From positions 310,001 through 374,000 of IMG/VR virus record IMGVR_UViG_3300024239_000011: DNA of 64,000 bases. One strand, given 5' to 3'. A program made the position numbers and the translations under genes. Positions 5,704-51,366 of the stretch are shown piece after piece; the stretch's first letter is position 1; each line of letters begins with the position of its first letter. A model generated the notes under the pieces. It ran no database searches, was not told where the DNA came from, and was given only the letters and a program-made list of their open reading frames with translations.

Positions 5704-5704
5704 T

Positions 5705-8009: not shown

Positions 8010-9511
8010 ATGAAATTACCACTCTGCTGCGTAGCCGTGGGGTCTTTCAAGTGGTACTCACCAATCGCTGCAACTACAATTGCAACTACTGCTATCAGGA
8101 ACGCAATTTTAAGAAGTTCCCGAACGAGTTCGATAGCGCCGAGCAACTTGATCGTGTTTGCGGTAAATTGGTCGAACACCGCAAGGACGACACCCACTTC
8201 GAGTTCCAATTTCTCGGCGGCGAACCGCTGTTGAAGAAAAATGTTTTAATGAATTTTATGCGGGATTATGCATGGAAATATCCCAAGGTAGTATTCAACG
8301 TAATCACCAATGGTAAACTTCTCGATCACGAAACGGCAGTAGAGTATATCACGAGTCACCCTCTGGCGAAAATCTATTTTTCCTGTGACGGTATTGACCT
8401 GAATACCAATACGCATCCCAAGACCTGGGAACGTATTGCGATACTGTATGACCGGCTCTATCAACGCTTCCCAGAGCGCATTGGCATCATCCCGGTACTA
8501 ACCAGCAGTACCATCCCTAATTACGTTGCCCTATTGGATTTGATGGCGGAAAAATATCCACTCAGTCATGTTCATGCATTGGCCGCAATCAGCGACCATT
8601 TCGATACCAACTTCGAATGGTCGCCCGAGCATATTCGCAGCGTCGGGGAACAAATCCGTCCGTTCTTCCTGAAACACCCAGGTTGGACCATTGACTATTA
8701 CATGTGGGATTATCCGCTCGATTCCTTCCTCGATTCGGCGGACGACCCGGCGGTGATGCCAAACGGTGACATACATCTGATGCCATCGTATTTTATGGGT
8801 GAAGCAGCAGACCTAAGCAATAAACCAGACTTCAATGTAATCACCGGGGAAGTATACCCGTACCTTGCCCAGAAACAGATCAAAGAGCGGTTGATTCAAG
8901 CGGCGAAAACTGCCAACTCGCGCTGTCAGACATGCCCGATTTCGGGGCATTGTCTTCCGATGAAATTCTTCACATTGGTACACTTACCGGACGAGCAAAT
9001 TACCGCAGAGACCGTGGTTGATGCAGAATGTAACACCATGCTTGATTTCTTCTGGAATATGCCGGTGTTCGCACATTTTCCCACCGGCATATTTCAGAAC
9101 CTTCAACAGCAAGTCCAACTGTTCCAGAAGTATCGGACACGATATGTTCGGGCGCTTTATGTTTTAGACCGTTTGGCTATTCCAGTTCTGCAACTTCTAA
9201 ATGACGATTTTGTTGAGAATATCGAAAAACTTGGCGTTGGAAAATATTTCTATCTAGATATGTATGGGGTTTCCCGCCATACCGAAGAAGTGCGCTCCGC
9301 ATATAATACTCCATTGCGGGATATTTTTTGTCATTTCAAGCATCATCCGAAACGTCGTCCACTTCACCCGGCATTGGTATGTAAAGTTGTTCGTGAATTG
9401 TTGGATAAACCGACCGACCATTTGTTTGAGTTAATTATTCCGAACCTTTACCACAAGGTCTATTATGGTCCAACGTGGCATTGGTCGTTTGACGACACTT
9501 ATAGGTGGTAA
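8006..9511 (+). CDS. Radical SAM protein with partial SPASM and C-terminal extension
   Basis: CNYNCNYC, LGGEP, ITNG, SCDG, CQTCPISGHC. Confidence 0.9.
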   Translation: MNEITTLLRSRGVFQVVLTNRCNYNCNYCYQERNFKKFPNEFDSAEQLDRVCGKLVEHRKDDTHFEFQFLGGEPLLKKNVLMNFMRDYAWKYPKVVFNVITNGKLLDHETAVEYITSHPLAKIYFSCDGIDLNTNTHPKTWERIAILYDRLYQRFPERIGIIPVLTSSTIPNYVALLDLMAEKYPLSHVHALAAISDHFDTNFEWSPEHIRSVGEQIRPFFLKHPGWTIDYYMWDYPLDSFLDSADDPAVMPNGDIHLMPSYFMGEAADLSNKPDFNVITGEVYPYLAQKQIKERLIQAAKTANSRCQTCPISGHCLPMKFFTLVHLPDEQITAETVVDAECNTMLDFFWNMPVFAHFPTGIFQNLQQQVQLFQKYRTRYVRALYVLDRLAIPVLQLLNDDFVENIEKLGVGKYFYLDMYGVSRHTEEVRSAYNTPLRDIFCHFKHHPKRRPLHPALVCKVVRELLDKPTDHLFELIIPNLYHKVYYGPTWHWSFDDTYRW

Positions 9512-10890
9512 TCATGGACAACCCTTTCAGTCAGGTCTATTGGATCAATCTGCTCCTGACTAATAAATGTAACAAGCAGTGTTCGTACTGCTATGAGCAG
9601 CATAAAGCCGAGTTTGAACGGTCGTACATCAATGCACATCGTGTGGATGAAATCTGCGCGAAGATGGACACCATGAACTCGCTTCAGAAAACCCTCCATT
9701 TTTTTGGCGGCGAACCCATGCTGAAGTTCGACACCATCATGGAGTACATGCGGGCATCGTCCCATAAATACCCCACATTGTCTTACGTGATTATCACCAA
9801 CGGCACGCTACTGACTCCTCAGAAATTCGAGGATTTCGTTTCGCACGGCGGCTCATTCTACATTTCCTGCGACGGCTGGGGGATCGATAACACTGACATC
9901 ACAACCAAGGATTTCAGTGCTATCAAGGATGTGGTTGAGGCATGCTTCCCGGTGGTCGCAGCCTATGATAAACGCATTACGTTCGACGTAGTTGTGCATC
10001 CCCGTGAGGTCGCGTCGTTCGGGCGGTTTATGCAGTACCTCGCCGGAAGTCCGCATTTCGAGCAAATCAATATCCACATCAAGCCATTGCTATACAGCAT
10101 GACCGATGGGTTGGTGCGCTGGGATGACGCAGCGATTAATCAATTCTTACAGGAATGTATGAATGCCATTGTGAAATCAAAGGGCATCAATTTCGAGATA
10201 GAAGGGTTCTACGAGAAGTCATGGGGCACGTGCATGACCATGGCAAACAACCTGAATGTTGATGTTGAGGGTAATTTTTCAGGGTGTTATTTTCTACTGA
10301 ACCAACATAAAGCCACCTCGGCATTCGATGATGCCATTTTTGGCAACATTCTAACCGGCGAGATTGATACTGCCAAAATCGCCAACTTTAAACGCCTGGA
10401 ACAGGAACTCTACCAGTCCTCTAAATGCCAATCTTGCGTATTGAACCCAAAATGCTTCCAGTGCAGTGCTGGACTGTACACAACCCTTGGAAAGTGGTAC
10501 GACAACGACAAGCATTGCGAAATCGTTATCCCATTCATCCAACGGTTGAATTCCTTCCAAGCCATGAAAGAGGATGCATATATCATTGGCTGCCTGAAGG
10601 AGAAAATCCAGGAACATGGGTCTGAGTGGTTTGTGACTCGCCTTAAGTATTGGACGACAGTTCACATGCAAGCGACGTTGCTGGAAATTTGTAATGCACA
10701 TATCCCAGCACAAAACATTATGGCGGGAAATGCGCCACTTGATTTGGGTCAGTGGCTCAGTGATGCGGGGGCAAAGCAAGTAGCAGAGCTTCATCACATT
10801 TTCACGCCTGCATTGGCTGATCTTTCTGCTCAAGATCAGTTTACGCTTTGCGTTGCGCGTGTGATTGAGAAAGAACATCCCAAAACCTAA
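9505..10890 (+). CDS. Radical SAM / SPASM-domain protein with C-terminal extension
   Basis: CNKQCSYC, FGGEP, ITNG, SCDG, CQSCVLNPKCFQC. Confidence 0.92.
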   Translation: MVIMDNPFSQVYWINLLLTNKCNKQCSYCYEQHKAEFERSYINAHRVDEICAKMDTMNSLQKTLHFFGGEPMLKFDTIMEYMRASSHKYPTLSYVIITNGTLLTPQKFEDFVSHGGSFYISCDGWGIDNTDITTKDFSAIKDVVEACFPVVAAYDKRITFDVVVHPREVASFGRFMQYLAGSPHFEQINIHIKPLLYSMTDGLVRWDDAAINQFLQECMNAIVKSKGINFEIEGFYEKSWGTCMTMANNLNVDVEGNFSGCYFLLNQHKATSAFDDAIFGNILTGEIDTAKIANFKRLEQELYQSSKCQSCVLNPKCFQCSAGLYTTLGKWYDNDKHCEIVIPFIQRLNSFQAMKEDAYIIGCLKEKIQEHGSEWFVTRLKYWTTVHMQATLLEICNAHIPAQNIMAGNAPLDLGQWLSDAGAKQVAELHHIFTPALADLSAQDQFTLCVARVIEKEHPKT

Positions 10891-13788: not shown

Positions 13789-14172
13789 ATGGTCAATTTT
13801 GATATGCGCATTCTGGTAGTCGATGACTATGCTACGATGCAGAAGATTGAGCGCAATTTGCTCAAGCAGATTGGTTTCGGGAATGTTGATACCGCAAATG
13901 ACGGCTCCCAGGCACTTCAAATGCTTCGGTTGCAGCACTATGATCTTATCCTGTCCGATTGGAACATGGAGCCGATGACCGGTCTGATGTTGTTGCGCGA
14001 AGTGCGCAATGACCCTGCCCTGAAGCATATCCCATTCATCATGGTAACTGCGGAAACTAAACAGGAAAATGTGATCGCTGCTCGGGAAGCAGGGGTGTCC
14101 AACTATATAATTAAACCCTTTACGGCGGATACATTAAAGAAGAAACTACAGTCGGTTATCGGGGATTTCTAA
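13789..14172 (+). CDS. cheY: Chemotaxis response regulator CheY
   Basis: Single receiver domain: ILVVDD, phosphoacceptor in SDWNMEPM, MVTAE, YIIKPF. GAGG RBS. Confidence 0.92.
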   Translation: MVNFDMRILVVDDYATMQKIERNLLKQIGFGNVDTANDGSQALQMLRLQHYDLILSDWNMEPMTGLMLLREVRNDPALKHIPFIMVTAETKQENVIAAREAGVSNYIIKPFTADTLKKKLQSVIGDF

Positions 14173-21884: not shown

Positions 21885-22123
21885 GCGACAATGTTTCTAC
21901 CGTCCTGGCGCGTGGATATTATCACGTTTGTAATGGCGGGGTAATGGTTGATGTGACTTTGGAGAATGGCATGGTTTCGGTGAATATTGACACCAGCACT
22001 CACGGGTTTGGTGGTCAGTTTAGTTTCAATCTTCCGAACCCCACGGAAGGGCTTGCTATGCTCGCGAAGGTATTCACTGACGCAGCAACAAATTATGAAA
22101 CTCGGAAACCTGACGATGAATAA
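21881..22123 (+). CDS. Hypothetical protein
   Basis: AAGGAG RBS, ATGA overlap. Confidence 0.55.
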   Translation: MSDNVSTVLARGYYHVCNGGVMVDVTLENGMVSVNIDTSTHGFGGQFSFNLPNPTEGLAMLAKVFTDAATNYETRKPDDE

Positions 22124-22328
22124 TTATCAGCGATACGTTATTGTACAACAAGGAGACGCATACCAGTTCTTTTACAATGCAAAAACGTTTCGTTGGACTA
22201 AAGGGATTGACAATGCGTCGTTCCACTCGTTGGAAGCTGCTAAAAAACAGGTAGATTTCTGGAAAGAGCATCGTATTGCTGATCTTTGTGACGCGGTGGT
22301 GATGAAGGTTGAATGCCATGACTTATAA
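22116..22328 (+). CDS. Hypothetical protein
   Basis: Overlap-coupled ORF. Confidence 0.5.
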   Translation: MNNYQRYVIVQQGDAYQFFYNAKTFRWTKGIDNASFHSLEAAKKQVDFWKEHRIADLCDAVVMKVECHDL

Positions 22329-22542
22329 GATCGACGGTGAACGCCCCAAATGGGGAACTCACCCTATCCGGTGTGGAAAACCCCGTTGCACATGGCGTGG
22401 TCATGAAACCGATCTTCTGTTGGTTACCGATGACGAAATCGGTGGCGAAGTGTATACGTGTCCAAAGTGCGGCAACAACGATTACATGTTCATGACCGAG
22501 CGCGAAATTGCCGCGTGGAACCGTAAAAAGGGTACAGTATGA
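22318..22542 (+). CDS. Small zinc-ribbon protein
   Basis: CGKPRC and CPKCG. Confidence 0.6.
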   Translation: MTYKIDGERPKWGTHPIRCGKPRCTWRGHETDLLLVTDDEIGGEVYTCPKCGNNDYMFMTEREIAAWNRKKGTV

Positions 22543-22919
22543 GCGGGCATCTTCTTGAAATCCAGGCGCGTCGTCTCTTAAAAATGCCGGAAGATTGGCT
22601 GGCGCACAAATGGGAGAAGGTCGGGAACGGCTTTCTGGTGTCCGGGTGCGTATGCACCGAGGTATACAAGCGCGGTCCCCGTAAAGGACAGCCGAACTTC
22701 TCAAAGCGCGACAAGACCACCGACATGGTGGCGGTAATCTCGTATGAGGCTGCTGATGCGTTCAGGCTCGAATGGGAACAGGAAACCGAGCTGTGCAGCC
22801 GGTGCATGGGTAAGAAGCAAATCGTCAACGCATGGCATCATATCAACGGCACAACCTATCGCGATTGCCCGCGTTGCAAAGGCACCGGACAGGCGCCCGT
22901 ATCGGAGGAAGCGGCATAA
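22539..22919 (+). CDS. Hypothetical protein with DnaJ-type CxxCxGxG zinc finger
   Basis: CSRCMGKK..CPRCKGTG. Confidence 0.65.
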   Translation: MSGHLLEIQARRLLKMPEDWLAHKWEKVGNGFLVSGCVCTEVYKRGPRKGQPNFSKRDKTTDMVAVISYEAADAFRLEWEQETELCSRCMGKKQIVNAWHHINGTTYRDCPRCKGTGQAPVSEEAA

Positions 22920-23119
22920 TGGTTGAAGTCGTAGGTAAAGATACGCGGAACATGAAGGAGATTACCTGCTCCCATTGTTCCTCCGTCCTCCGCTATAACC
23001 CGGTTGATATCAAGACCGGGAAAGTATCCGATCCGTGGGATCATCGGATGTGTGCTGAAACCGTTGAATATCGGTTCATCATCTGCCCATCTTGTACAAA
23101 TCAAGTTGGTATCAAATGA
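22919..23119 (+). CDS. Small zinc-ribbon protein
   Basis: CSHC..CPSC. Confidence 0.6.
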   Translation: MVEVVGKDTRNMKEITCSHCSSVLRYNPVDIKTGKVSDPWDHRMCAETVEYRFIICPSCTNQVGIK

Positions 23120-23349
23120 CCAATGATATATGGCAATCCATGGATACCGCCCCGAAAACCCTTCATGGGTTTCGGGCGCTGATGGCAGATGACACGATTC
23201 ACGAGGACGTGCATTGGGCAGAAGACATGAGCGGATCGGATCAGCCGCCGTTTCGGGGATGGTTTATTCCCGTGGTTCAGGACGGGAAGGTGGTTCGCTT
23301 TCAAGAGATTGAAACCCCGGCTAAGTGGATGCCCCGGAAGGATACGTAA
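23116..23349 (+). CDS. Hypothetical phage protein (WQSMDTAPK..WMP type)
   Basis: Common phage WQxxxTAPK start and WMP end. Confidence 0.6.
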   Translation: MTNDIWQSMDTAPKTLHGFRALMADDTIHEDVHWAEDMSGSDQPPFRGWFIPVVQDGKVVRFQEIETPAKWMPRKDT

Positions 23350-23685
23350 ATGTACACGGTCACCATCAAGGTAAAACACCGGGAAATCATTGGTCGGGAA
23401 TACTTCTTCGCGTCTCGGACCACGGTGATTCAAACCGAGGTTCCGATTATTAAGGGGTCAACGATTCTGTATCAGGGCAACCGTTACCGGATACCAGAGG
23501 ACGCCAATATAGAAATTGATGGGTCTGCTTACTTGGTTGAGTATGACCTGTACAAATTGGAAATGTCCGGGTGGTCCGCCGAGATGATCGCATCCAACTT
23601 CCCGGAACCCCAGTGGGTAGTTGCTCGATCCAAAATCTGCGATGTCCCGGACAAAAAACCAAAAAAAAGCTGGCTATTCTTCTAG
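23350..23685 (+). CDS. Hypothetical protein
   Basis: ORF tiling. Confidence 0.55.
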   Translation: MYTVTIKVKHREIIGREYFFASRTTVIQTEVPIIKGSTILYQGNRYRIPEDANIEIDGSAYLVEYDLYKLEMSGWSAEMIASNFPEPQWVVARSKICDVPDKKPKKSWLFF

Positions 23686-23695
23686 GAGATTACGG

Positions 23696-24010
23696 ATGTT
23701 TTCTAAAGCCCAAATCCAAGCCCTCGAAGATTTCATTGAGGCGAAAATCCGCGATCAAAATTCTCGTGATGTGGAAGATTCCATCTATCTGTCACGGTGC
23801 CGCGATGACCTCATGGAAGCCCTTGGGATTACGGAACCTGATATAACGCTCGAACAGATTGAACGGATTGACGAACTACGGCGTATTGTGTCAGGTATGG
23901 AAATCCCCATCAAGGTACCGACCGAACATGCTGCTGCCGGGGCTTATCTGATGGCATTGGTGTCCGCCGCGCCGGAACTGTTGAGCGCGGCCAAACGCGG
24001 TCTTTCGTAA
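23696..24010 (+). CDS. Hypothetical protein
   Basis: AGGAG RBS; C-terminal SAAPELL motif common in phage proteins. Confidence 0.55.
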   Translation: MFSKAQIQALEDFIEAKIRDQNSRDVEDSIYLSRCRDDLMEALGITEPDITLEQIERIDELRRIVSGMEIPIKVPTEHAAAGAYLMALVSAAPELLSAAKRGLS

Positions 24011-24035
24011 TGTTCATTCAGAAGGAAAGTTACAA

Positions 24036-24875
24036 ATGACCTCAATTTTTACCATTGATGTTGAGCGCATACAAATACAAAAGTACAGATTAACACAACA
24101 TCCGTTACTCCATGGTAATTATTACCTACGGACGATTGATGATTTGCGACTGTTCATGGAACACCATGTATGGTGTGTGTGGGACTTTATGAGCTTGTTA
24201 AAGACATTACAGGTAAATGTTGCACCTTCCTGTAATATATGGACACCAAAACGCAATATACCAAGTGAAGCTGTTCGGTTAATAAACGAAATCGTTTTGT
24301 GTGAAGAAAGTGACATTACTCCGGTTGAAAACCAGTACATGAGCCATTTCGATTTGTATTTGACTGCCATGCGTGAAATTGGTGCTAATTATACTCACGT
24401 ATTGACTTTTACTAAACGGCTCCACGAGCATCTGGAAAATAATAATTTTGATGAAAATACATGGAAGACTTTTCACGAATCTAATCCAGATATAATTTCA
24501 ACAATCCCGCCTGCTGCGTTGCGCTTTGTGACAAATACCATGAAGTGGTGTTTAGTGCCACATCACGCAGCCGCAGCTTTTTGCTATGGACGCGAAACAA
24601 TTATTCCAGCCATGTTTCAGAATTTGCTTCGGCAATTGAATATTGGGAGTCACAAGGCTCCATTTTTTCATTTTTATCTTGAGCGTCATATTCAAGTAGA
24701 TGGTGAAGAACACGGAAATGCCGCCGAACGACTTATTACAATTTTGTGCGGTAATGATCCTCACAAAATACTTGAAGCAGAGAAAATTGCATTAGATGCA
24801 ATAGAAACTCGTTTTCAATTATGGTCAGATGTAGAAAAATTATTGATAAAAAATATTCGTCAAACCGTACTATGA
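24036..24875 (+). CDS. DUF3050-family heme-oxygenase-like protein
   Basis: FMEHHVWCVWDFMSLLK, INEIVLCEESD, SHFDLY, GRETIIP, YLERHIQVDGEEHG. Confidence 0.85.
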   Translation: MTSIFTIDVERIQIQKYRLTQHPLLHGNYYLRTIDDLRLFMEHHVWCVWDFMSLLKTLQVNVAPSCNIWTPKRNIPSEAVRLINEIVLCEESDITPVENQYMSHFDLYLTAMREIGANYTHVLTFTKRLHEHLENNNFDENTWKTFHESNPDIISTIPPAALRFVTNTMKWCLVPHHAAAAFCYGRETIIPAMFQNLLRQLNIGSHKAPFFHFYLERHIQVDGEEHGNAAERLITILCGNDPHKILEAEKIALDAIETRFQLWSDVEKLLIKNIRQTVL

Positions 24876-24882
24876 GGTTCCT

Positions 24883-25197
24883 ATGATAACAGTTCGCATT
24901 CCCGGTGTAAGAACCGAGGAAGAATGGCGTACAGTTGCCATTTCCGATAATATTGAAATATTGTCGAATGTTTCGTGGGAGCAAGAAGAAGGGCGACGCC
25001 AATTTTTGCGTCTTTGGCAGTATCTTCTAAAAGGATGCCTCTTTGACTTTTATAGCATTACATCTTCAAGTGGTAAAGTAATTATTACTGCCATCAATCC
25101 TAATTGGTTTGATTTTGTAATTGAGACTGTACCGGATAAACATATGGTTGATTTTTTTGAAGATCAACGCGAAGCAGCAAATCGCTGTCTCGATTAA
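24883..25197 (+). CDS. Hypothetical protein (paralog of next gene)
   Basis: Shared ILSN..W..G..FV..PD..MVDFFE.QR. Confidence 0.6.
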   Translation: MITVRIPGVRTEEEWRTVAISDNIEILSNVSWEQEEGRRQFLRLWQYLLKGCLFDFYSITSSSGKVIITAINPNWFDFVIETVPDKHMVDFFEDQREAANRCLD

Positions 25198-25215
25198 TAT
25201 CAAACGGTTGGTGCT

Positions 25216-25497
25216 ATGGAAAATGATCTAAATTCCTATGAGGGGAAGGTAGACTTCCTTTCTAACGACCCCGATGAGCTTGCTTGTGCAAAGAAAGAAT
25301 GGGACATCTTCTGGCAATCTCTGATTGCTGGAACGGTACATGATAACTATAATTTTCATAATGATGCCCATGGACGTATTCTGATAATCCCGCGTAACGG
25401 CGACTTGATGACGTTCGTGGTCGATAAACGCCCAGACGAAAACATGGTTGATTTCTTTGAAGCGCAACGCCAAGAGGCGATCCGCGATCTCGACTAA
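25216..25497 (+). CDS. Hypothetical protein (paralog of previous gene)
   Basis: Same motifs as the previous gene. Confidence 0.6.
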   Translation: MENDLNSYEGKVDFLSNDPDELACAKKEWDIFWQSLIAGTVHDNYNFHNDAHGRILIIPRNGDLMTFVVDKRPDENMVDFFEAQRQEAIRDLD

Positions 25498-25503
25498 AGG
25501 CAT

Positions 25504-25531
25504 CCTTCGCTAAATATTCGGTTAGCGAGGG
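25504..25531 (+). promoter_or_regulatory. Late promoter with RBS-sequestering hairpin
   Basis: ccttcgctaa / ttagcgaggg inverted repeat overlapping CTAAATA and the RBS. Confidence 0.6.
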
Positions 25532-25539
25532 AAATTGTC

Positions 25540-26079
25540 ATGTCAAATGATTTTCGTAAATGGATGAGCATTATTTCCGAGGGTGAGGTCGTCCCATTCG
25601 GGAAGAAACCCCCATTATCACCCCTCATGCAGGCGATGCGAGAAGACCCGCCTATCGAACATGAGAGTATTGAGGTTGTTGAGCGCCATTGGCATCAACC
25701 GACCATCCAAATTGTATGGAACGATCATGGGTTTGTCGCCAACATCACCAAAGAAACCGTGCTTGCACTGATGCGGTTGGCTGATAACCAGTCGGTTGTA
25801 GTAGAAGACTTACTCACTACGTCATACAAACGCGAAAAGAAAACCCACAACGACTACAAATACAAAATTACGCGCAAGGGTGCGACGTTCGTATTTCAGC
25901 CAAGCTATTGGTCAACCGAAATGGGTGGAGAACGCACGCAGAAATTCGTAGCAAGTGAATATTCGGTTCCGCGCTACGACTTGGCCACTAGTACACAAAA
26001 ACTAAAAACGTACAGGTCTAGCTACAAAATTAAGGATTTACCACTTAAGCAACCAGTTATACCATTTACATCAGAATAA
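25540..26079 (+). CDS. Late protein, possible internal head protein
   Basis: Late promoter; N-terminus MSNDFRKWMSIISE resembles capsid-targeting leaders ending in E. Confidence 0.5.
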   Translation: MSNDFRKWMSIISEGEVVPFGKKPPLSPLMQAMREDPPIEHESIEVVERHWHQPTIQIVWNDHGFVANITKETVLALMRLADNQSVVVEDLLTTSYKREKKTHNDYKYKITRKGATFVFQPSYWSTEMGGERTQKFVASEYSVPRYDLATSTQKLKTYRSSYKIKDLPLKQPVIPFTSE

Positions 26080-26168
26080 AGAAAGGGGGCATTAAGCCCC
26101 CTTTCGTGTAGATGCGGCGCAAATGTTTATCACCTCCTAAAGGAATTATCCGGCACCGCCATCTGAGG
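26075..26168 (-). ncRNA. Candidate sRNA displaying a perfect Shine-Dalgarno sequence
   Basis: Minus-strand TTGACC-17-TAACTT promoter (26202-26174); stem 26153-26164 with 26110-26120 enclosing AGGAGGTGAT; terminator 26081-26105 with U tail. Confidence 0.5.
26081..26105. terminator. Bidirectional intrinsic terminator
   Basis: gaaagggggc-attaa-gccccctttc. Confidence 0.8.
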
Positions 26169-26290
26169 ATTCAAAGTTACTGTACCATTACTATCCGGTC
26201 AATTTAAAAGTATTTTACGTCGAAACTAAATACATTAAGCACGACCATCCACGTAGTGGGGCGTGCTTTTGTTTTTTTTGGGGAAGTGTT

Positions 26291-26632
26291 ATGTACGATC
26301 AGAACGAAGTAAATCATCAGCAGGTTCTTGATGACCTCACGGTACTCTCTCAAATCAGCGGTAATATTCGACCGGAAATACGCCTACATGCGATAAGCCA
26401 TATCGATTACGATTCCAATGTATATGCGAATATGGGTAATGTTCACCTAGGTTCCCAAATGGAAACAGAAAGCAACCACAATTGGCATAATTGGGTTGAC
26501 CATCTTGATGGGAAAAATGACACCCATCGTAGTATGGAAGGTTGGATTGCGAGTGATCTTACGGGCGCGTCCACCCATCGAATTGATTTCGATGATTCTG
26601 ACGCGGGACGTGTTGAGAAATTGACGTGGTAA
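26291..26632 (+). CDS. Hypothetical protein
   Basis: ORF after CTAAATA and a hairpin/poly-T leader. Confidence 0.45.
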   Translation: MYDQNEVNHQQVLDDLTVLSQISGNIRPEIRLHAISHIDYDSNVYANMGNVHLGSQMETESNHNWHNWVDHLDGKNDTHRSMEGWIASDLTGASTHRIDFDDSDAGRVEKLTW

Positions 26633-26967: not shown

Positions 26968-27732
26968 TCACCATTGAAAATGGTATGTTTTGAAAAACGC
27001 CCGCCAATGTGTGCATTCATTGGCGGCGAAAGTTTCGCGCATGAACAAGTAGTTTCCGGTGGATGTTGATAGGTAATGCGCCGGGGCGTCGAACTGGATG
27101 CCCATGGCGATATCCTCCATTCCTTTGTACAAGACTGAGACGATATTCGTGGGTACACGCTCGTCTTCAATGACATACATACTGTCGTTGATGATAAAGG
27201 AAACCGGTTTCCCACCGAACGAGACATCAGACACGGCACACATAGCACTCGTGGTTCTGCGTTCGAATAAGTCGAGTGCGGTAGCATGATTCATCATGAC
27301 CACATTACCACGACCTCGGCGCGTTTTTGCGGCGCACAAGTTTCCGCCTCGATTTATGATGATGAACGGTGAAACACCATCGCCCCCGCAAAAGGTAAAT
27401 TTTCGCGGTGAATAATAGGCTGTCAGGTCAACTGCCTCTGGGTCAGCCGTGATAAGGCTGATAAAGTATTTCTCTGCTTCAGCTAGATCGGTTACTTTGA
27501 CCCACGTGCCTTTTCCATCAAACGGGCGACACACATCCATGCGCAGTTTGATCGTTGGGCGAGGCGCATCCGGTGCATATGCTTTGGTAATGAACCAAGC
27601 TGTATACTGACGCTCGAATTCGGTTGTCGGATTTGTTGGTGGTTGTGGGTATTCCCGTGGCGTTTGATCTACCATGGTCACCAATGCCGATACCGTGTCT
27701 CCGGTATGGATACCAAGAAATGGATGCTGCAT
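26968..27732 (-). CDS. Truncated, divergent major-capsid (gp23-family)-like protein
   Basis: INRGGNLCAAKTRRGRGNVVMM and VSVLYKG..DA resemble gp23 ANxIAxxTRRGKGN and VGYKG..DAG. Confidence 0.6.
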   Translation of the reverse strand: MQHPFLGIHTGDTVSALVTMVDQTPREYPQPPTNPTTEFERQYTAWFITKAYAPDAPRPTIKLRMDVCRPFDGKGTWVKVTDLAEAEKYFISLITADPEAVDLTAYYSPRKFTFCGGDGVSPFIIINRGGNLCAAKTRRGRGNVVMMNHATALDLFERRTTSAMCAVSDVSFGGKPVSFIINDSMYVIEDERVPTNIVSVLYKGMEDIAMGIQFDAPAHYLSTSTGNYLFMRETFAANECTHWRAFFKTYHFQW

Positions 27733-28628
27733 TAGAACTTTCCCACTATTTCTTTGATCTGGTCGATGGCTGACGCAAAGCGGGTTTTCTGCTTATAATG
27801 CGATGAATGATGCGGTAGATCGTACTCTGGTCGATCCAAGCGAAACCGCAATGCGCGTGTCATGTTATGCCAATATGGACGCTCGTTTTTGTACAACAGG
27901 TTCTCCACGGGCAAGCAAAGCCACAGATCGTTGTCATGCCCCGTACAGACGTATCCGACCGCATCAATCTCGCCCGGTCCCTTATAGAATTGATGAACCA
28001 CGTCAGGCTTAACGTCGTCGGAGGTAACAAAATGACATCCACCTACCTGTCCTATAACCGGGTATCCTGCCATTTCATCAAGCCATGGATATCCCTTGTA
28101 GTCGGCAAGAGAACTCACATCCGGTTTGGTAAACAGAGACTTGACCATATGCGGTCGCGGATCACCGCCCAGAACCCGATGGTACGTCTCAGCCTGGGCG
28201 AACCATGTCCCGGCGAACCCGCGTCGGTTTTCTTGCCCCAGAGTGTTGGCCCGGCTAATCATCCAATGAATATGGGCTTCGGTGGGGTTACGCCGTTCAT
28301 ATCGGAACGCAAAATCAGCGAGACTATCCCAGTCCTGTAGCCGTTCTTCTGCGCTCCGCTGAAGAACGATTTGTTCGGCATGCTTAATCGAATTGACCTT
28401 GTGCCATTCTGCACGCGGATCGCCAATCTCAAGTGTTACGACTTTGATATTGAGGCGGGGATCAGGGCTAAGATACCCCTTGGCAATAGACCATGGATTG
28501 ATGGGATCGGTCGGTGGTTCTATTTCAGGATAAATCAATTCCATTATCAACGCATGTACTTTACCCACACTTCCTTTTGTGGTCTGTATACCCAAAAATG
28601 GGTGTAGAAATTCTGATCGGTTGGTCAT
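27732..28628 (-). CDS. Truncated, divergent major-capsid (gp23-family)-like protein
   Basis: GIQTTKGSVGKVHAL (cf. GVQPMTGPTGxxFAL), ANTLGQENRRG, FYKGPGEIDAVGYVC. Ends AIDQIKEIVGKF. Confidence 0.6.
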   Translation of the reverse strand: MTNRSEFLHPFLGIQTTKGSVGKVHALIMELIYPEIEPPTDPINPWSIAKGYLSPDPRLNIKVVTLEIGDPRAEWHKVNSIKHAEQIVLQRSAEERLQDWDSLADFAFRYERRNPTEAHIHWMISRANTLGQENRRGFAGTWFAQAETYHRVLGGDPRPHMVKSLFTKPDVSSLADYKGYPWLDEMAGYPVIGQVGGCHFVTSDDVKPDVVHQFYKGPGEIDAVGYVCTGHDNDLWLCLPVENLLYKNERPYWHNMTRALRFRLDRPEYDLPHHSSHYKQKTRFASAIDQIKEIVGKF

Positions 28629-29350
28629 GATATCATCCCCTGGAACATGCTAATGTCTACAGCACAGGCATAGTTGCGCCAATCATCGCGAATGTATAAC
28701 GCGAGATCATCGTTTTTCCGAAATATATTGGTAACCAAAAATGCGGGAGCAATATGTTGACCGGTGCCGCGCCATAATACAATGCAACGATCAGGTGGTA
28801 TTCGTTCATCCAGATACCCGAAGAAATAAGAGCGGAAAAAATCGCCGCCATGCCCGCGTTCTTCGTTCCAGCAAACGTTCTCGATTTTCTCTCGCCAAAC
28901 CGGATTCAACATACGTGTATTGGCGCCTTGCCGATTTAGCCGTATTAGATAATTCGCAGCACGATTCCACGTTTTTTCGATGTGGTCGCTGGTCGTGTCA
29001 GGTTCGAGAACGTTTGTAAGCACTTTCTCAATAAAAATGCTTTCCGCTTCATCAATACTTGAAACTCGTACCCATTCGCCTTTCTGATCCCACCATGCTT
29101 TATCCATGATTGGAGCATAGTCACATGTCGTTTGACACCGCTCAACGACCCCATTCTGTTGCTTGTCCCATTCCATGGCGCGTTCGTAGGGCACGATCTT
29201 CAATACATGTACCGAACCAGTCTGAATACCGAACAGGTGGTGTTGTTGCTTAATTGTCCCTGATCGGTCTGCCACAAGATTGGAGATAGTCAAACTGTCT
29301 CGGAGGACATCAATCCATGCACGGAACCCATTGTCGTTTTCGGAAGTCAT
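28625..29350 (-). CDS. Third gp23-like paralog
   Basis: FGIQTGSVHVL, RAANYLIRLNRQGAN, DERIPP..VLWRG align with the two downstream paralogs. Confidence 0.5.
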   Translation of the reverse strand: MTSENDNGFRAWIDVLRDSLTISNLVADRSGTIKQQHHLFGIQTGSVHVLKIVPYERAMEWDKQQNGVVERCQTTCDYAPIMDKAWWDQKGEWVRVSSIDEAESIFIEKVLTNVLEPDTTSDHIEKTWNRAANYLIRLNRQGANTRMLNPVWREKIENVCWNEERGHGGDFFRSYFFGYLDERIPPDRCIVLWRGTGQHIAPAFLVTNIFRKNDDLALYIRDDWRNYACAVDISMFQGMIS

Positions 29351-29359
29351 GATTGATCC

Positions 29360-29405
29360 TATGTTAAACGGAAATCCCACAATGATAAATATTGAAGGGA
29401 AGTCC
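29360..29405 (+). promoter_or_regulatory. Late promoter flanked by two thyA-like 18-mers
   Basis: ATAAATA at 29385-29391. 29360-29377 and 29388-29405 each match thyA 30644-30661 at 15/18 positions. Confidence 0.6.
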
Positions 29406-29422
29406 AACGATTAGGTGAAGCA

Positions 29423-30364
29423 ATGTCTAGTGGTATATATCGTATTCGCAATGTAATCAATAATAAATCTTACTACGGTAGTTCGAAAGATATCGAAAAA
29501 AGATGGTGTCAGCATCAAAGTAATCTCAATTGCGAACGACATATCAACCCACATCTACAACGTGCTTGGAAAAAATACGGAGCAGACAATTTCGTGTTCG
29601 AGATAGTTGAACTCGTGGAGGTCGATTTATTACTTGATGTTGAGCAGCAATACTTGGATGAAAACGTAGGTGGGTATAACATCGCACCGGCTGGTGGTGG
29701 CGATACAACCTCTAAACATCCAGATCGTGAGGCGATTATTGCTAAGCGCGTTGAAAGTGTTATCAATCGAAATGCTAAGTTATGCCCCGAGGAATATGCA
29801 AGGATTTATTGTGGGAAAATTGGTGAAAAGAACGGGATGTATGGAAAAACACACACGGAAGATGTAATAAGAAAAATCAAAGAAAAACTTCACAGTTGGT
29901 ATTCAGAAAATGATGGATACCGTAAAGGTAAGACGTTCGAAGAAGTGCATGGTGCCGAGATTGCTGAACACTTAAAACGAAAATTAAGTGAGTTTGCGTC
30001 TACCAGAACCGGTGCCAAAAATCCATTCTACGGTAAACATCATTCGGACGAAGCCAAACAAAAAATACGAGAAAAACACCTTGGCAAACCGCTATCTCAA
30101 TCAGCTAAACTGGCTATTACCGGAGAAAATTCTGCAAAATTTCAAGGATACTACCACACCCCATGGGGTGTGTTTCCTTCCACCCCACAAGCACAAAAGG
30201 CTCACCCATATCTATTATCCAACACCATTAACACTTGGTGCAAGAAATGTGATGTGGTAATTTCAAGAACTGGAAGATCGCGATACCTTCAGGAAATCGG
30301 GGAAAGTGTCGTGGGAAAAACCTACCGCGAAATTGGGTTTTGGTTTGAAGAAAAGGGCGCGTGA
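29423..30364 (+). mobile_element. Free-standing GIY-YIG homing endonuclease with NUMOD3 repeats
   Basis: SGIYRIRN..SYYGSS..RWCQH; repeats KNGMYGKTHT and KNPFYGKHHS. Convergent on thyA. Confidence 0.9.
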
Positions 30365-31948: not shown

Positions 31949-32225
31949 TTACCACGTCCCTATGCAGATTTTTCAACGTCCTAACAAGTATCTTTTCAAT
32001 CAATGTGTAATCCAGATCGGCAGTGATCCCGACCAACATTTCTGCGTTGTCCACCCCCGGCTCTTCTAACAACTCCAAGAAACCCGAGAGGTTATGATTT
32101 ACGACCTTACCTGATTCGTAAGTGATCTGTACATTTTTAACGAAACGTGGATTTACTTTTGCAAAATCGATAACAATCCCAGTAAACGCATAGTCTAAAT
32201 GTGATGGGGGCTTCATGATAACCAC
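31890..32225 (-). CDS. Hypothetical protein
   Basis: ORF upstream of dhfr. Confidence 0.5.
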   Translation of the reverse strand: MVIMKPPSHLDYAFTGIVIDFAKVNPRFVKNVQITYESGKVVNHNLSGFLELLEEPGVDNAEMLVGITADLDYTLIEKILVRTLKNLHRDVVSGNGISDSCGVSQHGNRQG

Positions 32226-32300
32226 TCATAAAATACACACATAATAATTGGGAATATACCAGTAAATATTACCGGTCGCATTCCAATCAGTAGGTCTAAT

Positions 32301-33242
32301 ATGGCTAAACTAACGAGAGAAGAATTCATTGATCGTAGCATTGCAATTCATGGCGACAAATATGATTATTCACTGTGTGAATATCATAACTGTGATACCC
32401 CTGTCATTATTTTGTGCAGGGAGCATGGTACGTTTTCACAAACTCCATACCTTCATATGAAAGGGAGGGGCTGCCGCAAATGTGGTTATTTGAAAGTATC
32501 CAAATTTACATCAGAGAATAATAAGAAGAGGATAGTTCCGATTGAGCAAATTAGACTGCGACTTGCTGAAAAATACCCGTTATATAATTACGATAAAGCT
32601 GAACTATTCGGGAATACGCTTCAAGATATTTGGTGCCCAAAACACGGTTATTTTGAATTAAACTATCGATTACATGCTCATACCAATCGCCAATCAAAAT
32701 GCCCGAAATGCGCCCTCGAAATCAGAACTGGTAAACTCCGTCATACCCTTGATGATTTTATTCGCAAATCACAAGATGTGCATGGTAACAAGTATAATTA
32801 TTCAGCATCAACATATCTGGGGGATAGTTATAAAATTGAGATTGAATGCCCAGAACATGGTGTGTTTGCTCAAAAAGCAAATAACCATTTAAACGGGCAT
32901 GGGTGTCCAAAATGCGCCAACCGCTGGAAAATGCAAGATTTGTGGCTTGACCATCTTGGTCTTCCGCGATCATCCACACACCGACAAATACATCTTACAA
33001 TCGGTGATTATAAATTCATAGCAGATGGGTTTGATCCGGTTCAAAACACCGTCTATGAATTTTGGGGTGATTATTGGCACGGCAATCCAAGAAAATATAA
33101 TGCAGCAGCGACAAATCACTTCGGTAAAACCTTTGGAGATTTGTACACTGCTACATTAGAAAAACGCCGTGTCATCTTGACCAAATTTCAGTTGATTGAA
33201 ATTTGGGAGGATGAATACTTACTTCAACAACCCACGCTCTGA
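32301..33242 (+). mobile_element. Putative homing endonuclease (DUF723-like zinc repeats plus C-terminal nuclease)
   Basis: Repeats HGxKYxYS..CxxHGxF..GCxxC; C-terminal ADGF..YEFWGDYWHG. Opposite strand to its neighbours. Confidence 0.8.
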
Positions 33243-33488
33243 CATCATATCAAGATGTTCGTATGCTGCCAGTAAAATTGCAGAAGATTTTGTAATAATC
33301 TCTGCAAATTCGTCAGCATCTAATGGAACCGCATGATTGGCGTTTGATGCCAGTTGAAAAAGGTATTTCCCAACAATAGCACACCAATCATTTGGGGTAT
33401 TTGTGCGGTCCCACTCGCTCCCAAAACGATCAAGCTGATGCTCACGCTCAAGCAAAACCCGATCCAAGAATTCAGTTCGCTTGCTCAT
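33219..33488 (-). CDS. MazG-like small helical protein
   Basis: ERxxQ..WD..NTPNDW..AILLAA pattern. Confidence 0.45.
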   Translation of the reverse strand: MSKRTEFLDRVLLEREHQLDRFGSEWDRTNTPNDWCAIVGKYLFQLASNANHAVPLDADEFAEIITKSSAILLAAYEHLDMMSERGLLK

Positions 33489-35849: not shown

Positions 35850-37175
35850 GTGTGTAATGTGAATACGCCCGAACTTCTAGCCAAAGCACTTGAATCGCTA
35901 CAGGATGGTGTGATCGTCACCGACGCTTCGCAAACCATAGTGTTCGTCAACGATTCGGTGTTGGCACAGACTGGGTACACCAGGGAGGAAGTGGTTGGAC
36001 AAACCCCCAAACTCTTCCAGTGTCATCAAACAACGGATACCTTTAAAAATTCAATACGCGCTACCCTTGCGCGTGGCGATTCCTTTATTGGGACGACGGT
36101 GAACCGTCGTAAAGACGGTACCACGTATCATGTTGAATTATATGTTGCTCCGATCCACGGGGAGGGTGGGATAACTCATTACGTTGGTACTCAACGCGAT
36201 ATTATCCGCCGAGGCGGAAGACATTTTGAATCATTTTTTGATGTATCCACCCACCTTCTAATTATCCTTGATGTGGATGGTACTCGTATCCGCATAAACA
36301 CCATTAATGCATTGGCAGAGAAATACCTTAATCCAGAATGGTGTACCTGCCGTGGTTTGGATATTTCGTTTCAATGCGCTGGGTTGGAGGAATTCGTCAT
36401 CCATGCCAAATTATGCACGGAGACGTGTGAGGTAACTCGCTTTGAGCAGGTTATCAATACCAATCAGGGTGAGCGCGTTGTTGAGTTCACGTTAGTCCCG
36501 GTAGTTGATGGTAATGGTGTATGTGTCGGTTTGAATTGCGTTGGTGAGGATATCACCAGCGAAAAAGAGGCTTTGGAACATATTCATTTCTTGGCCTACC
36601 ATGACAGCCTTACCGAACTTCCAAACCGCGTCCTCATGACGCAACGCATGAATGCTGAGATTGAACGTTCTCGGCGTTTTGGGCACCCGTTTGCGTTGCT
36701 GTTTCTTGATCTTGATAATTTCAAACAGGTCAACGACACGATGGGTCATGGGGTTGGTGATAAACTTCTCAAAAAGGTTGCGAAGCGTCTTTCTAGTGCT
36801 GTACGCAAGAATGATCTGGTGGCACGATTAGGTGGTGATGAATTCGCTGTCATCATGACAACGGACGGAGATGCTTTAGCTGATGCGGAAACGTTGGCGA
36901 CCCGAATCATTGCCGCATTATCACTACCGTTCGAGGTTGATGAACACCGGATCGATAATATCGGCGTGAGTGTTGGGGTTGCACTATTCCCCAATCATGC
37001 AACTTCGAGAGACGAGTTATTTCGCAACGCCGACATAGCGATGTATCACGCTAAACGCACACACGGAAATTGTCATACCGTTTTTGTAGATGTATTTGGT
37101 GGGTGTAAAAAAGATTGCGAACACTGTGATCTAAAAGTTCGATGCTTCGGAGATAGCTTCGTTCTCACCCCGTAA
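35850..37175 (+). CDS. PAS-PAS-GGDEF diguanylate cyclase
   Basis: PAS motifs (TGYTREEVVGQTP, NRRKDG); HDSLTELPNR, DLDNFKQVNDTMGH, RKND I-site, RLGGDEF. Confidence 0.95.
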   Translation: MCNVNTPELLAKALESLQDGVIVTDASQTIVFVNDSVLAQTGYTREEVVGQTPKLFQCHQTTDTFKNSIRATLARGDSFIGTTVNRRKDGTTYHVELYVAPIHGEGGITHYVGTQRDIIRRGGRHFESFFDVSTHLLIILDVDGTRIRINTINALAEKYLNPEWCTCRGLDISFQCAGLEEFVIHAKLCTETCEVTRFEQVINTNQGERVVEFTLVPVVDGNGVCVGLNCVGEDITSEKEALEHIHFLAYHDSLTELPNRVLMTQRMNAEIERSRRFGHPFALLFLDLDNFKQVNDTMGHGVGDKLLKKVAKRLSSAVRKNDLVARLGGDEFAVIMTTDGDALADAETLATRIIAALSLPFEVDEHRIDNIGVSVGVALFPNHATSRDELFRNADIAMYHAKRTHGNCHTVFVDVFGGCKKDCEHCDLKVRCFGDSFVLTP

Positions 37176-42497: not shown

Positions 42498-42884
42498 TTA
42501 CAGCGAGCTAAAACGCTTGGTGATGTGATGTATGTCAGACCGGCGTGCGGGACCGATACCCAGCGCGGTGATGATGGGGTTGCCATCAAAATGCGGGGGT
42601 AGGATATGACCGCTATCGGTGATGAGGGCGCAGGGCAGCCCAGCCCGTTCCGCTTCTTCCTTGGCGCGGAGAAGCTGGTTCAGGTTCTTGGCTTTCAAAA
42701 CACATTTCGTTCCGTGCCGATCCCCCAAATATTCAGTCGCATGACTTGGGGTTTCCGCGTGGGCTTTGAGGAACGTATCAAGAAAAGCATGTCCGCATTG
42801 CGCAGCAGCTTTGCCCGGCGGCATATCAAGATCGCCGCGAATAATGGCATACAATCGAAGGGTGGGATCAGGAATCTACGACAT
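42498..42884 (-). CDS. Peptidyl-tRNA hydrolase, PTH2 type, with in-frame TAG at codon 3
   Basis: LYAIIRGDLDMPPGKAAAQCGHA..KCVLKA..ITDSG..TALGIGP. GGAG RBS then ATG TCG TAG ATT CCT GAT. Confidence 0.85.
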
Positions 42885-42965
42885 GGTACATACTCCAAGT
42901 TCTTAGGGTTTAGACATAAGTTCTTTGCTTTTAGATAAATAATTTATCAGGCAAGGAACTACTCA

Positions 42966-43646: not shown

Positions 43647-43654
43647 ATTGTGCA

Positions 43655-43795
43655 GTGCCCGGCTTGTGATGCTGTCTTTCCACTACTCATGTCAAGGTCG
43701 CCACGAGCAATGGCGTAGAGACGCAGGGTGGGATCGCCACCCAGATTAGGGATCGAAGTAGAAATCTACGTGTCAGCGGCACTGATATGGGTCAT
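43655..43795 (-). pseudogene. Orphaned 5' fragment of pth
   Basis: GGAGG RBS, then MTHISAADT*ISTSIPNLGGDPTLRLYAIARGDLDMSSGKTASQAGH, which breaks off at the endonuclease 3' end. Confidence 0.8.
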
Positions 43796-43847
43796 AGGAA
43801 CCTCCGGTTTTCGATAATCCTATTTATAAACACCTGAGTTATGGGTG

Positions 43848-51211: not shown

Positions 51212-51366
51212 TCTTCTTCCTCCGAGTTCGCTCTAGAGCGAGCCGCCGGAAGAAATAACCGACCGCCCTAGAGCATGTTTCGGAGGAAGAAGGGATTTTG
51301 TATGTTCTGATCCATGCTGCTATTTACGCTAAATAGGTCTAGAATGTCAACCGGGAGATTTGATAA

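What the first reader, a model, noticed from the sequence alone, without database searches (positions are those of the whole stretch)
26075..26202. Candidate ~95-nt sRNA presenting a perfect complement of the 16S rRNA 3' end
Seen on the minus strand: TTGACC-17-TAACTT, then a stem (agatggcggtgc / gcgccgcatct) enclosing a loop with AGGAGGTGAT (26129-26138), then an intrinsic terminator. That 10-mer is exactly complementary to the 16S tail AUCACCUCCU. No ATG follows it, and the only TTG frame runs into the terminator. Inference: a 30S decoy, a sponge for host sRNAs with CU-rich anti-SD loops (common in alphaproteobacteria), or a GGA-binding protein sponge. A 10-codon ORF (MAVPDNSFRR, ending AGG AGG TGA) is an alternative reading.
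Basis: partly seen in the sequence, partly recalled or inferred. Interest (0 to 1): 0.68.

Follow-up and report, generated by a model that had tools for sequence, protein, structure and literature searches.

The report
Orphan ribosome-binding site on a mini-transcript
Between two genes of an uncultured 543-kb phage lies a tiny opposite-strand unit with a promoter, the strongest ribosome-binding site in the window and a terminator but no conserved reading frame, so it is a credible small-RNA candidate whose function remains untested.

Summary
AGGAGGTGAT (26138-26129, minus strand) is the longest complement to the 16S tail in the window. About 0.12 copies are expected, and AGGAGG is 3.6-fold depleted here. 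TTGACC-17-TAACTT ranks 17th among all sigma-70-like sites. The better-ranked sites that I checked precede an SD and a start codon. The terminator at 26105-26081 has its U-tract on the minus strand. The stem enclosing the SD is no better than chance (z = -1.5).

The window is an uncultured huge-phage contig. Both flanking genes are ORFans. Two other assemblies are identical across the spacer. One variant strain keeps the hairpin, loop and terminator unchanged. It carries a 2-nt insertion in the spacer that shifts both SD-led mini-ORFs, so a conserved peptide is unlikely. That strain's contigs break at 26163/26282, where identity falls from 96.6% to 77%, so no covariation test is possible.

Best reading (0.42): a real minus-strand mini-transcript of about 92 nt whose exposed SD docks 30S subunits or CU-rich RNAs. 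Main rival (0.25): the 5' stump of a truncated gene. The decoy and sponge functions are untested.

The parts
26197..26202 (-). -35 hexamer TTGACC of the candidate promoter P1
   Evidence: Read. Together with TAACTT it scores 11.7 bits and ranks 17th of all sites in the window.
26174..26179 (-). -10 hexamer TAACTT of P1, 17-nt spacer. The predicted start near 26168-26164 lies at the foot of the hairpin.
   Evidence: It is below the 9/12 threshold of the simple scan but keeps T1, A2 and T6.
26145..26174 (-). Alternative promoter TTGAAT-18-GATAAT. It would start the RNA at A26138, the first base of the SD.
   Evidence: 9/12; 10.0 bits; 57 sites in the window score as well. Weak.
26153..26164 (-). 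5' arm of the hairpin, AGAUGGCGGUGC. It contains the AUG of the 10-codon ORF.
   Evidence: The stem has one G.U on the minus strand, which is an A.C mismatch on the plus strand (-18.2 vs -14.1 kcal/mol).
26129..26138 (-). AGGAGGUGAU, a perfect 10-nt Shine-Dalgarno sequence in the 32-nt loop
   Evidence: unique, longest, hexamer depleted. (duplex -17.5, opening cost 3.4 kcal/mol).
26110..26120 (-). 3' arm of the hairpin, GCGCCGCAUCU. The UUG at 26122-26120 abuts it.
26106..26109 (-). Single-stranded spacer ACAC between hairpin and terminator. It is the only place where the variant strain differs (AUAUAC).
26072..26105 (-). Intrinsic terminator: 10-bp stem with 7 G-C pairs, 5-nt loop and U-tract UUUAUUCUG. 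The tract overlaps the stop codon and last codons of gene A on the other strand.
   Evidence: On the plus strand the tail is only UUUCGUGU.
26130..26162 (-). 10-codon ORF MAVPDNSFRR*, with no SD of its own. Its stop codon lies inside the SD.
   Evidence: Codon score -4.2. AGG makes up 3.2% of Arg codons.
26066..26122 (-). SD-led UUG frame of 18 codons. Its stop codon lies beyond the U-tract, and the frame is shifted in the variant strain. The AUU frame (26124-26092) ends in the terminator loop.
26237..26279 (+). Context: plus-strand intrinsic terminator (hairpin plus UUUUGUUUUUUUU) that ends 1 nt before the RBS of gene B
   Evidence: A variant of its 3' arm is present in L031.
25540..26079 (+). 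Context: gene A, a 179-aa ORFan. It is truly coding: 7 of 9 strain differences fall at third codon positions.
26291..26632 (+). Context: gene B, a 113-aa ORFan. It shows in-frame indels relative to the ENA strain.

Best explanation
This is a genuine, self-contained minus-strand mini transcription unit in the spacer between two plus-strand ORFan genes of a huge phage. A host-type (sigma-70-like) promoter would start an RNA of about 92 nt at the foot of a hairpin. The large loop of that hairpin carries AGGAGGUGAU. Four nucleotides after the hairpin comes a strong intrinsic terminator.

The RNA has no conserved reading frame, so it works, if it works, as RNA. Its active part is the SD loop, which pairs with CCUCC-type sequences. 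The most abundant such sequence is the 16S 3' tail, so 30S subunits would dock on it. Docking would either be idle or start abortive translation at UUG or AUU that runs into the terminator hairpin.

Shown: the motifs, their rarity, the strand polarity, the computed accessibility and duplex energy, and the frame-breaking insertion. Inferred: transcription, 30S binding, and any effect on host or phage.
For: - The 10-mer is unique and the longest 16S complement in the window. AGGAGG is 3.6-fold depleted, so a perfect copy is unlikely to be accidental.
- The promoter ranks 17th of all sites. Six of the other high-scoring sites (40349, 26656, 47987, 43851, 35801, 3289) sit 20-45 nt upstream of an SD and a start codon, so host-type promoters are in use.
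- The terminator U-tract is good only on the minus strand, and a G.U pair favours the minus strand.
- The layout is compact: the predicted start is about 2 nt before the hairpin, and a 4-nt spacer leads to the terminator. Random decay of a gene would rarely leave this.
- A strain 96.6% identical has no change in the 79 structured nt (about 3 expected at the 3.9% third-position rate of gene A). Its only differences are in the spacer, and they shift both SD-led frames.
- The duplex with the 16S tail is -17.5 kcal/mol against a 3.4 kcal/mol opening cost.
Against: - There are no expression data.
- The only relatives are identical copies (L029, L030) and one partial variant, so there is no covariation.
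- The conservation argument is weak, because 1.4 kb nearby is also identical.
- The hairpin alone is no better than chance.
- The promoter lies in the 26164-26281 segment that is not recovered in the variant strains.
- Promoter-like sites at this score are as common as in shuffles.
- No described sRNA class has a perfect SD as its active element.
- Titrating ribosomes would need very high copy numbers (general knowledge).
- A UUG lies 10 nt after GGAGG, so the unit could be a gene start.
Confidence: 0.42

Rival explanations
1. This is a fossil: the 5' stump (promoter, 5' UTR, RBS, UUG and four or five codons) of a minus-strand gene. The body of that gene was lost when the gene A plus terminator module, or another recombination at this mosaic junction, replaced it. 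The RNA may still be made, but it has no function.
For: - The unit has the same layout as true gene starts in this genome: promoter, 20-45 nt, SD, start codon.
- It sits where identity to the ENA strain falls from 96.6% to 77% and where three variant contigs break.
- Both neighbours are ORFans.
- There is a precedent in the same window. At 43851-43650 a promoter, an SD and the first codons of a Pth2-like gene are duplicated beside a homing-endonuclease insertion.
Against: - It needs a breakpoint within about five codons of the start, plus a minus-polarity terminator exactly at the junction.
- Promoter, SD and terminator are all intact, with no decay.
- A 10-nt SD is longer than that of any of the ~75 gene starts I inspected in the window.
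- No severed gene body was found. The minus ORF 25228-25503 scores worse than the overlapping plus ORF, and nothing else in the window repeats the spacer.
Confidence: 0.25
2. It is a translated micro-cistron or regulatory leader. Ribosomes load at the SD, start at UUG (18 codons) or AUU (10 codons) and translate into the terminator hairpin. Translation, not the peptide, then decides whether the terminator forms and whether antisense transcription continues into gene A. The unit could also act as a minigene that traps ribosomes or tRNA.
For: - UUG lies 10 nt and AUU 8 nt after GGAGG.
- TTG starts with good SDs occur elsewhere in the window, for example at 3341.
- In both strains one of the two frames ends at the UAA in the terminator loop.
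- The phage carries a Pth2-like peptidyl-tRNA hydrolase gene.
Against: - There is no AUG or GUG.
- The peptide is not conserved because the frames are shifted by 2 nt.
- The UUG frame has no stop codon before the expected 3' end.
- No minus-strand gene lies downstream to be regulated.
Confidence: 0.12
3. The functional strand is the plus strand. The gene A to gene B spacer RNA, read through the weak plus-side terminator and ended at the strong terminator at 26237-26279, carries AUCACCUCCU. That sequence copies the 16S tail and would mask an SD in cis or in trans, as in the 3'-UTR anti-SD of S. aureus icaR.
For: - A strong plus-strand terminator lies just before the RBS of gene B, so plus-strand RNA does cross the spacer.
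- The MFE fold pairs UCCUAAAGGAA with the U-run and GGGG of gene B's RBS.
- This phage does use cis anti-SD/SD hairpins: at 51214-51294, CUUCUUCCUCC pairs with GGAGGAAGAAG at the RBS of minus gene 50852-51211.
- The icaR precedent is PMC3868564 (abstract).
Against: - The plus-strand hairpin is weaker (-14.1 kcal/mol, z = -0.2) and has an A.C mismatch.
- The predicted pairing with gene B's RBS is made of A-U and G.U pairs, and the whole fold gives z = -1.7.
- No plus-strand promoter scores above 6.3 bits.
- The terminator next to gene A is polarised for the minus strand.
Confidence: 0.08
4. The features are a chance co-occurrence of a 10-mer, a promoter-like site and the bidirectional terminator of gene A in a non-coding spacer.
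For: - About 0.12 copies of the 10-mer are expected per window.
- The counts of promoter-like sites equal those in shuffles.
- The hairpin is not significant.
- The window holds 53 inverted repeats of comparable size.
Against: - AGGAGG is strongly depleted.
- The joint placement is improbable: the SD lies 36-45 nt after a top-17 promoter and 24 nt before a minus-polarity terminator, inside roughly 8% non-coding sequence.
Confidence: 0.08

Closest known systems
Phage lambda OOP RNA (short antisense RNA between cII and O; from general knowledge)
   Same: A short RNA of under 100 nt, encoded on the opposite strand between two same-strand phage genes. It has its own sigma-70-type promoter and an intrinsic terminator, and it converges on the upstream gene.
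   Different: OOP overlaps about 55 nt of the cII coding region and acts as an antisense RNA. Here the overlap with gene A is at most 5 nt plus the stop codon, and the distinctive element is an SD, not an antisense segment.
STAB-SD and strong-SD 5' stabilisers (B. thuringiensis cry3A; B. subtilis hbs, PMC5737220)
   Same: A near-perfect complement to the 16S 3' end that is not used to start a protein. Bound 30S subunits or ribosomes act on the RNA itself.
   Different: STAB-SD sits in the 5' UTR of a long mRNA upstream of the real RBS and protects against RNase J in Firmicutes. Here a terminator follows 24 nt later, there is no mRNA body to protect, and the host is unknown. The phage's nearest kin infect Alphaproteobacteria and Gammaproteobacteria.
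CsrB/RsmY/RsmZ protein-sponge RNAs (general knowledge)
   Same: GGA-containing motifs presented in hairpin loops that overlap SD-like sequence, and a Rho-independent terminator.
   Different: Those sponges carry 5-22 GGA loops. This RNA has two GGA motifs (26150-26148, 26137-35), and one of them is predicted to lie in a stem.
Prophage-encoded anti-sRNAs AgvB/AsxR of EHEC (general knowledge; reviewed in PMC12197685)
   Same: Short RNAs encoded in phage intergenic regions that mimic an mRNA target site and soak up host sRNAs.
   Different: Their mimic sequences match specific sRNA seeds (GcvB, FnrS). Here the mimic would be a generic SD, and no partner sRNA is known.
5' gene stump beside a homing-endonuclease insertion, window 43851-43650
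   Same: A minus-strand TTGACA-17-TATAAA promoter, a GGAGG and a start codon, with no full-length gene behind them, next to mobile or foreign DNA.
   Different: That stump keeps about 40 recognisable codons of a Pth2-like gene, which is duplicated on the other side of the endonuclease gene. The unit at 26 kb keeps no recognisable coding remnant.

Membership tests
Independent sRNA gene (own promoter, Rho-independent terminator, non-coding) | Own promoter at a suitable distance | tested here: met
   TTGACC-17-TAACTT scores 11.7 bits and ranks 17th in the window. About 0.007 such sites are expected in the relevant 60 nt. This is a sequence match only.
Independent sRNA gene (own promoter, Rho-independent terminator, non-coding) | Intrinsic terminator of the same polarity | tested here: met
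   10-bp stem with 7 G-C pairs and a U-tract on the minus strand.
Independent sRNA gene (own promoter, Rho-independent terminator, non-coding) | No conserved reading frame | tested here: met
   A 2-nt insertion in strain L003 shifts both the UUG and the AUU frames. The 10-codon AUG ORF has no SD and a poor codon score.
Independent sRNA gene (own promoter, Rho-independent terminator, non-coding) | Structure conserved with covariation in relatives | tested here: inconclusive
   Only identical copies (L029, L030) and one partial variant without stem changes were found. No other relatives exist in the viral, metagenome or protein collections.
Independent sRNA gene (own promoter, Rho-independent terminator, non-coding) | A discrete transcript is made | not testable with these tools
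   No transcriptome data are available, and the phage is uncultured.
Any Rfam family | Match at or near the gathering score | tested here: not met
   No hit in the window at gathering score. The best hit at 25900-26400 is 20 bits against a threshold of 50, and it comes from the terminator only.
STAB-SD 5' stabiliser | Orphan SD in the 5' UTR of a longer mRNA, upstream of the true RBS | tested here: not met
   A terminator follows 24 nt after the SD, and no minus-strand gene lies downstream.
Csr/Rsm sponge RNA | Many (at least 5) GGA motifs in hairpin loops | tested here: not met
   There are two GGA motifs in about 92 nt, one of them in a predicted stem.
Leader-peptide transcription attenuator | Leader ORF plus terminator upstream of a regulated gene on the same strand | tested here: not met
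   Downstream on the minus strand lies only the antisense of gene A, with no ORF of credible coding score.
Lambda bar-type minigene | SD followed at proper spacing by AUG, one to a few codons and a stop | tested here: not met
   No AUG or GUG follows the SD, only UUG and AUU.
Lambda OOP-like antisense RNA | Substantial overlap with the coding region of the convergent gene | tested here: not met
   The predicted 3' end near 26075 overlaps gene A (which ends at 26079) by at most 5 nt.

The most novel reading that the evidence does not exclude
The phage makes a dedicated SD-decoy RNA. This short, stable transcript would exist only to present a maximal-affinity Shine-Dalgarno loop. It would capture host 30S subunits, or host regulatory RNAs or proteins that recognise SD or anti-SD sequence, and so re-route translation during infection.
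Probability: 0.1. Interest if true: 0.8.

Novelty: new member of a known kind. Interest (0 to 1): 0.36.

Why it matters
Huge phages are known to carry many translation-related genes, but almost nothing is known about their small RNAs. If this unit is expressed, it would be a rare case of an RNA whose only obvious active element is a perfect ribosome-binding site without a gene. It would give a direct handle on whether phages tamper with initiation by RNA mimicry. If it is a fossil, it marks a recombination scar at a strain-variable junction and has only local interest. At present it is a well-formed candidate in a single uncultured lineage, with no expression data and no covariation.

Tried and rejected
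- **Rfam.** Nothing at gathering score or at E-value level. No tRNA or tmRNA.
- **Homologues of the flanking genes.** Megablast and tblastn against phage records found none. The viral-contig scans returned only the window's own contig. The 5.8-billion and 1.8-billion protein searches gave one near-identical relative for each gene.
- **20-mer scan of viral contigs.** Four hits, all in coding sequence of one unrelated phage group, so chance.
- **Structured pattern in metagenomes.** The window's own contig plus 15 GC-rich chance hits.
- **Distant BLAST of the spacer against phages.** Only the terminator hairpin matches other terminators.
- **Copies or targets within the window.** blastn-short found no complementary or repeated stretch longer than 12 nt.
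- **Host identification through genome contigs.** Only a 28%-identical MAG hit, which is uninformative.
- **AlphaFold model of gene A.** pLDDT 37.7, unusable.
- **[quoted passage not shown]** Rejected, because AGG is 0.16% of codons and AGGAGG is depleted.
- **"The minus ORF 25228-25503 is the severed body of the gene."** Rejected on codon score, 11.3 against 28.7 for the overlapping plus ORF.
- **The simple promoter scan as evidence.** The hit count equals shuffles.
- **Exact-protein look-ups.** Two more assemblies were found, but they are identical, so they add no variation.

Full report
**Where the window comes from.** The window is part of IMGVR_UViG_3300024239_000011 (also Ga0247724_1000001), a 543,035-bp viral contig. 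It carries virion-protein genes distantly related to Salicola phage SCTP-2 and phiKZ-like phages. It also carries a Pth2-like gene that is 50-53% identical to those of Agrobacterium phage Atu_ph07 and Sinorhizobium phage Phosso. It is therefore an uncultured huge phage with an unknown host. The finding lies in a 211-nt spacer between two plus-strand genes. Gene A (25540-26079, 179 aa) and gene B (26291-26632, 113 aa) have no Pfam or PHROG match. Each has a single near-identical relative in billions of proteins.

**The observation.**
- TTGACC at 26202-26197, a 17-nt spacer, and TAACTT at 26179-26174.
- A hairpin with arms at 26164-26153 and 26120-26110 (11 pairs, one bulge, one G.U).
- AGGAGGTGAT at 26138-26129, inside the 32-nt loop.
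- A 4-nt spacer, then a 10-bp G+C-rich hairpin at 26105-26081 followed by UUUAUUCUG.
- No ATG or GTG after the SD.
- UUG at 26122, which opens 18 codons that run through the terminator to a stop at 26068-26066, beyond the expected 3' end.
- AUU at 26124, which opens 10 codons ending in the terminator loop.
- The ORF MAVPDNSFRR at 26162-26130, which has no SD of its own.

**How much exceeds chance.**
- *The SD.* The 10-mer is the only perfect copy in the window and the longest contiguous complement to the canonical 16S tail. The ~75 gene starts I inspected use at most 7-8 nt. Base composition predicts 0.12 copies. AGGAGG occurs 8 times against 28.9 expected, and AGG is 3.2% of Arg codons. SD-like hexamers are therefore selected against here, and a perfect one in non-coding DNA is unlikely to be accidental.
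- *The terminator.* It is among the three best in 20 kb, and its U-tract is good only on the minus strand.
- *The promoter.* It fails the 9/12 threshold of the simple scan. On a rough sigma-70 weight matrix (frequencies from general knowledge) it scores 11.7 bits and ranks 17th of all sites on both strands. About 0.007 such sites are expected in the 60 nt where a promoter would be useful. Sites at that score are no more frequent than in shuffles (17 vs 18.7). Six of the other high-scoring sites (40349, 26656, 47987, 43851, 35801, 3289) each lie 20-45 nt upstream of an SD and a start codon. Host-type promoters are therefore in use, and this site has the same geometry.
- *The hairpin.* Taken alone, it is not significant. 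It gives z = -1.5 on the minus strand and z = -0.2 on the plus strand, and the window has 53 inverted repeats of similar size.
- *Accessibility of the SD.* The central bases have P(unpaired) of 0.14-0.16. Opening costs 3.4 kcal/mol, against a -17.5 kcal/mol duplex with the 16S tail.

**Which strand.** The G.U pair in the stem becomes an A.C mismatch on the plus strand (-18.2 vs -14.1 kcal/mol). The terminator next to gene A has a long A-tract upstream and only UUUCGUGU downstream on the plus strand. Both points favour the minus strand. A separate, strong plus-strand terminator (26237-26279) ends 1 nt before the RBS of gene B. Plus-strand RNA probably crosses the spacer too, and any minus-strand RNA would be antisense to it.

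**Comparative evidence.**
- Exact-protein look-ups found the same phage in ENA ERZ27245855 and JGI 3300035670. The whole spacer is identical in both.
- A variant population in ENA ERZ4201046 gives two contigs. L003 matches window 21979-26163 at 96.6% and ends at the foot of the hairpin. L004 starts at 26282 and is only 77% identical from there on.
- L031 (JGI 3300034072) starts inside the plus-strand terminator, with several differences.
- The unit therefore sits on a strain-variable mosaic junction. The segment 26164-26281, which holds the candidate promoter, has not been recovered in any variant.
- In L003 the terminator, the part of the hairpin it covers and the loop (79 nt in all) are unchanged. 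The third codon positions of gene A differ at 3.9% (7 of 9 differences are at third positions). About three changes would therefore be expected, giving a Poisson P near 0.05. This is only suggestive, because 1.4 kb nearby is also identical.
- The only differences are in the spacer between hairpin and terminator (ACAC becomes AUAUAC). The net 2-nt insertion shifts both SD-led frames. A conserved peptide is therefore unlikely, while a single-stranded linker in an RNA would tolerate the change.
- No covariation test is possible.

**Interpretation.** The evidence supports a real ribosome-binding site on a compact minus-strand unit with no conserved coding capacity.
- *Best reading (0.42): a short RNA that acts through the SD loop.* It would dock 30S subunits or other CCUCC-bearing partners, and UUG/AUU initiation would be abortive at most. 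The compact layout and the intact state of all three signals argue for this reading. So does an SD longer than that of any gene inspected here.
- *Main rival (0.25): a 5' stump of a minus-strand gene truncated at this junction.* The unit looks like real gene starts in this genome. A promoter, an SD and an N-terminal fragment of a Pth2-like gene are duplicated beside a GIY-YIG endonuclease gene at 43851-43650. Against it, the stump would need a breakpoint within a few codons of the start and a correctly polarised terminator at the join. No severed gene body was found.
- *Smaller rivals.* These are a translation-dependent micro-cistron (0.12), a plus-strand anti-SD element in the A-B spacer RNA (0.08; weak fold, no promoter) and chance (0.08).

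**Comparison with known systems.**
- No Rfam family matches.
- In anatomy the unit resembles lambda OOP RNA, but it barely overlaps gene A.
- It resembles STAB-SD in having an orphan SD, but there is no downstream mRNA.
- It has only two GGA motifs, so it is not a Csr/Rsm-type sponge.
- It lacks an AUG, so it is not a bar-type minigene.
- No minus-strand gene lies downstream, so it is not a leader-peptide attenuator.
- I therefore file it as a new candidate member of the broad class of phage-encoded small RNAs. A dedicated SD decoy remains possible but untested (probability about 0.1).

**Verdict.** Interest is moderate to low until a transcript is shown.

Noticed in passing
window 42498-43851; L027 (Atu_ph07) 440-660; L028 (Phosso) 395-660: A Pth2-like peptidyl-tRNA hydrolase gene (42498-42854, minus strand; phrog_1866) is separated from a promoter, an SD and a duplicated copy of its first ~40 codons (43851-43650) by a plus-strand GIY-YIG/NUMOD3 homing-endonuclease gene (42966-43646). 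In both window copies, and in Atu_ph07 and Phosso, the conserved domain is preceded in frame by an SD-led ORF of 2-8 codons ending in TAG or TGA. No ordinary start codon lies between that stop and the conserved residues. This could reflect readthrough, reinitiation, or a minigene sensor upstream of a peptidyl-tRNA hydrolase.
   Followed up: partly
window 51195-51300: CUUCUUCCUCCGA and UCGGAGGAAGAAG form a 13-14-nt inverted repeat about 55 nt apart. On the minus strand, the upstream arm would sequester the RBS (GGAGGAAGAAGA-ATG) of gene 50852-51211. This would be a cis anti-SD/SD translational control hairpin.
   Followed up: partly
window 26237-26290; L031 1-31: A strong plus-strand intrinsic terminator (hairpin plus U4GU8) ends 1 nt before the RBS of gene B, so gene B depends on readthrough. 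A variant strain has a changed 3' arm and a better SD (GAGGAAG).
   Followed up: partly
window 26163/26282 versus L003 and L004; window 29423-30364; L004 4989-7321: Strain mosaicism relative to the ENA ERZ4201046 strain. Identity is 96.6% to the left of the element and 77% to the right. The GIY-YIG endonuclease gene at 29423-30364 is absent from the ENA strain. The ENA strain instead carries IS605 OrfB/TnpB and IS1595 transposase genes where the window has 32217-33441.
   Followed up: partly
window, whole: AGGAGG is 3.6-fold under-represented (8 observed, 28.9 expected) and AGG is 3.2% of Arg codons. This is consistent with a host that uses a canonical anti-SD.
   Followed up: yes
window 13789-14172, 35850-37175, 4483-10890, 24036-24875: Unusual cargo for a phage: a CheY-like receiver protein (Pfam Response_reg, 4e-28), a PAS-GGDEF diguanylate cyclase, five consecutive radical-SAM genes, and a DUF3050/HamA_HO-like (PF11251) gene.
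   Followed up: no
L029 and L032 (ENA ERZ27245855, contig k141_178484): The same region lies on an 869,618-bp contig, much longer than the 543-kb IMG/VR contig. The true genome may be larger, or that contig may be a concatemer or a misassembly.
   Followed up: no
window 26968-29407 (minus strand): Three tandem minus-strand genes. In the window or in the ENA strain's gene table, two of the three give weak Pfam Gp23 (major capsid) hits. They converge on the plus-strand block that contains the element.
   Followed up: no
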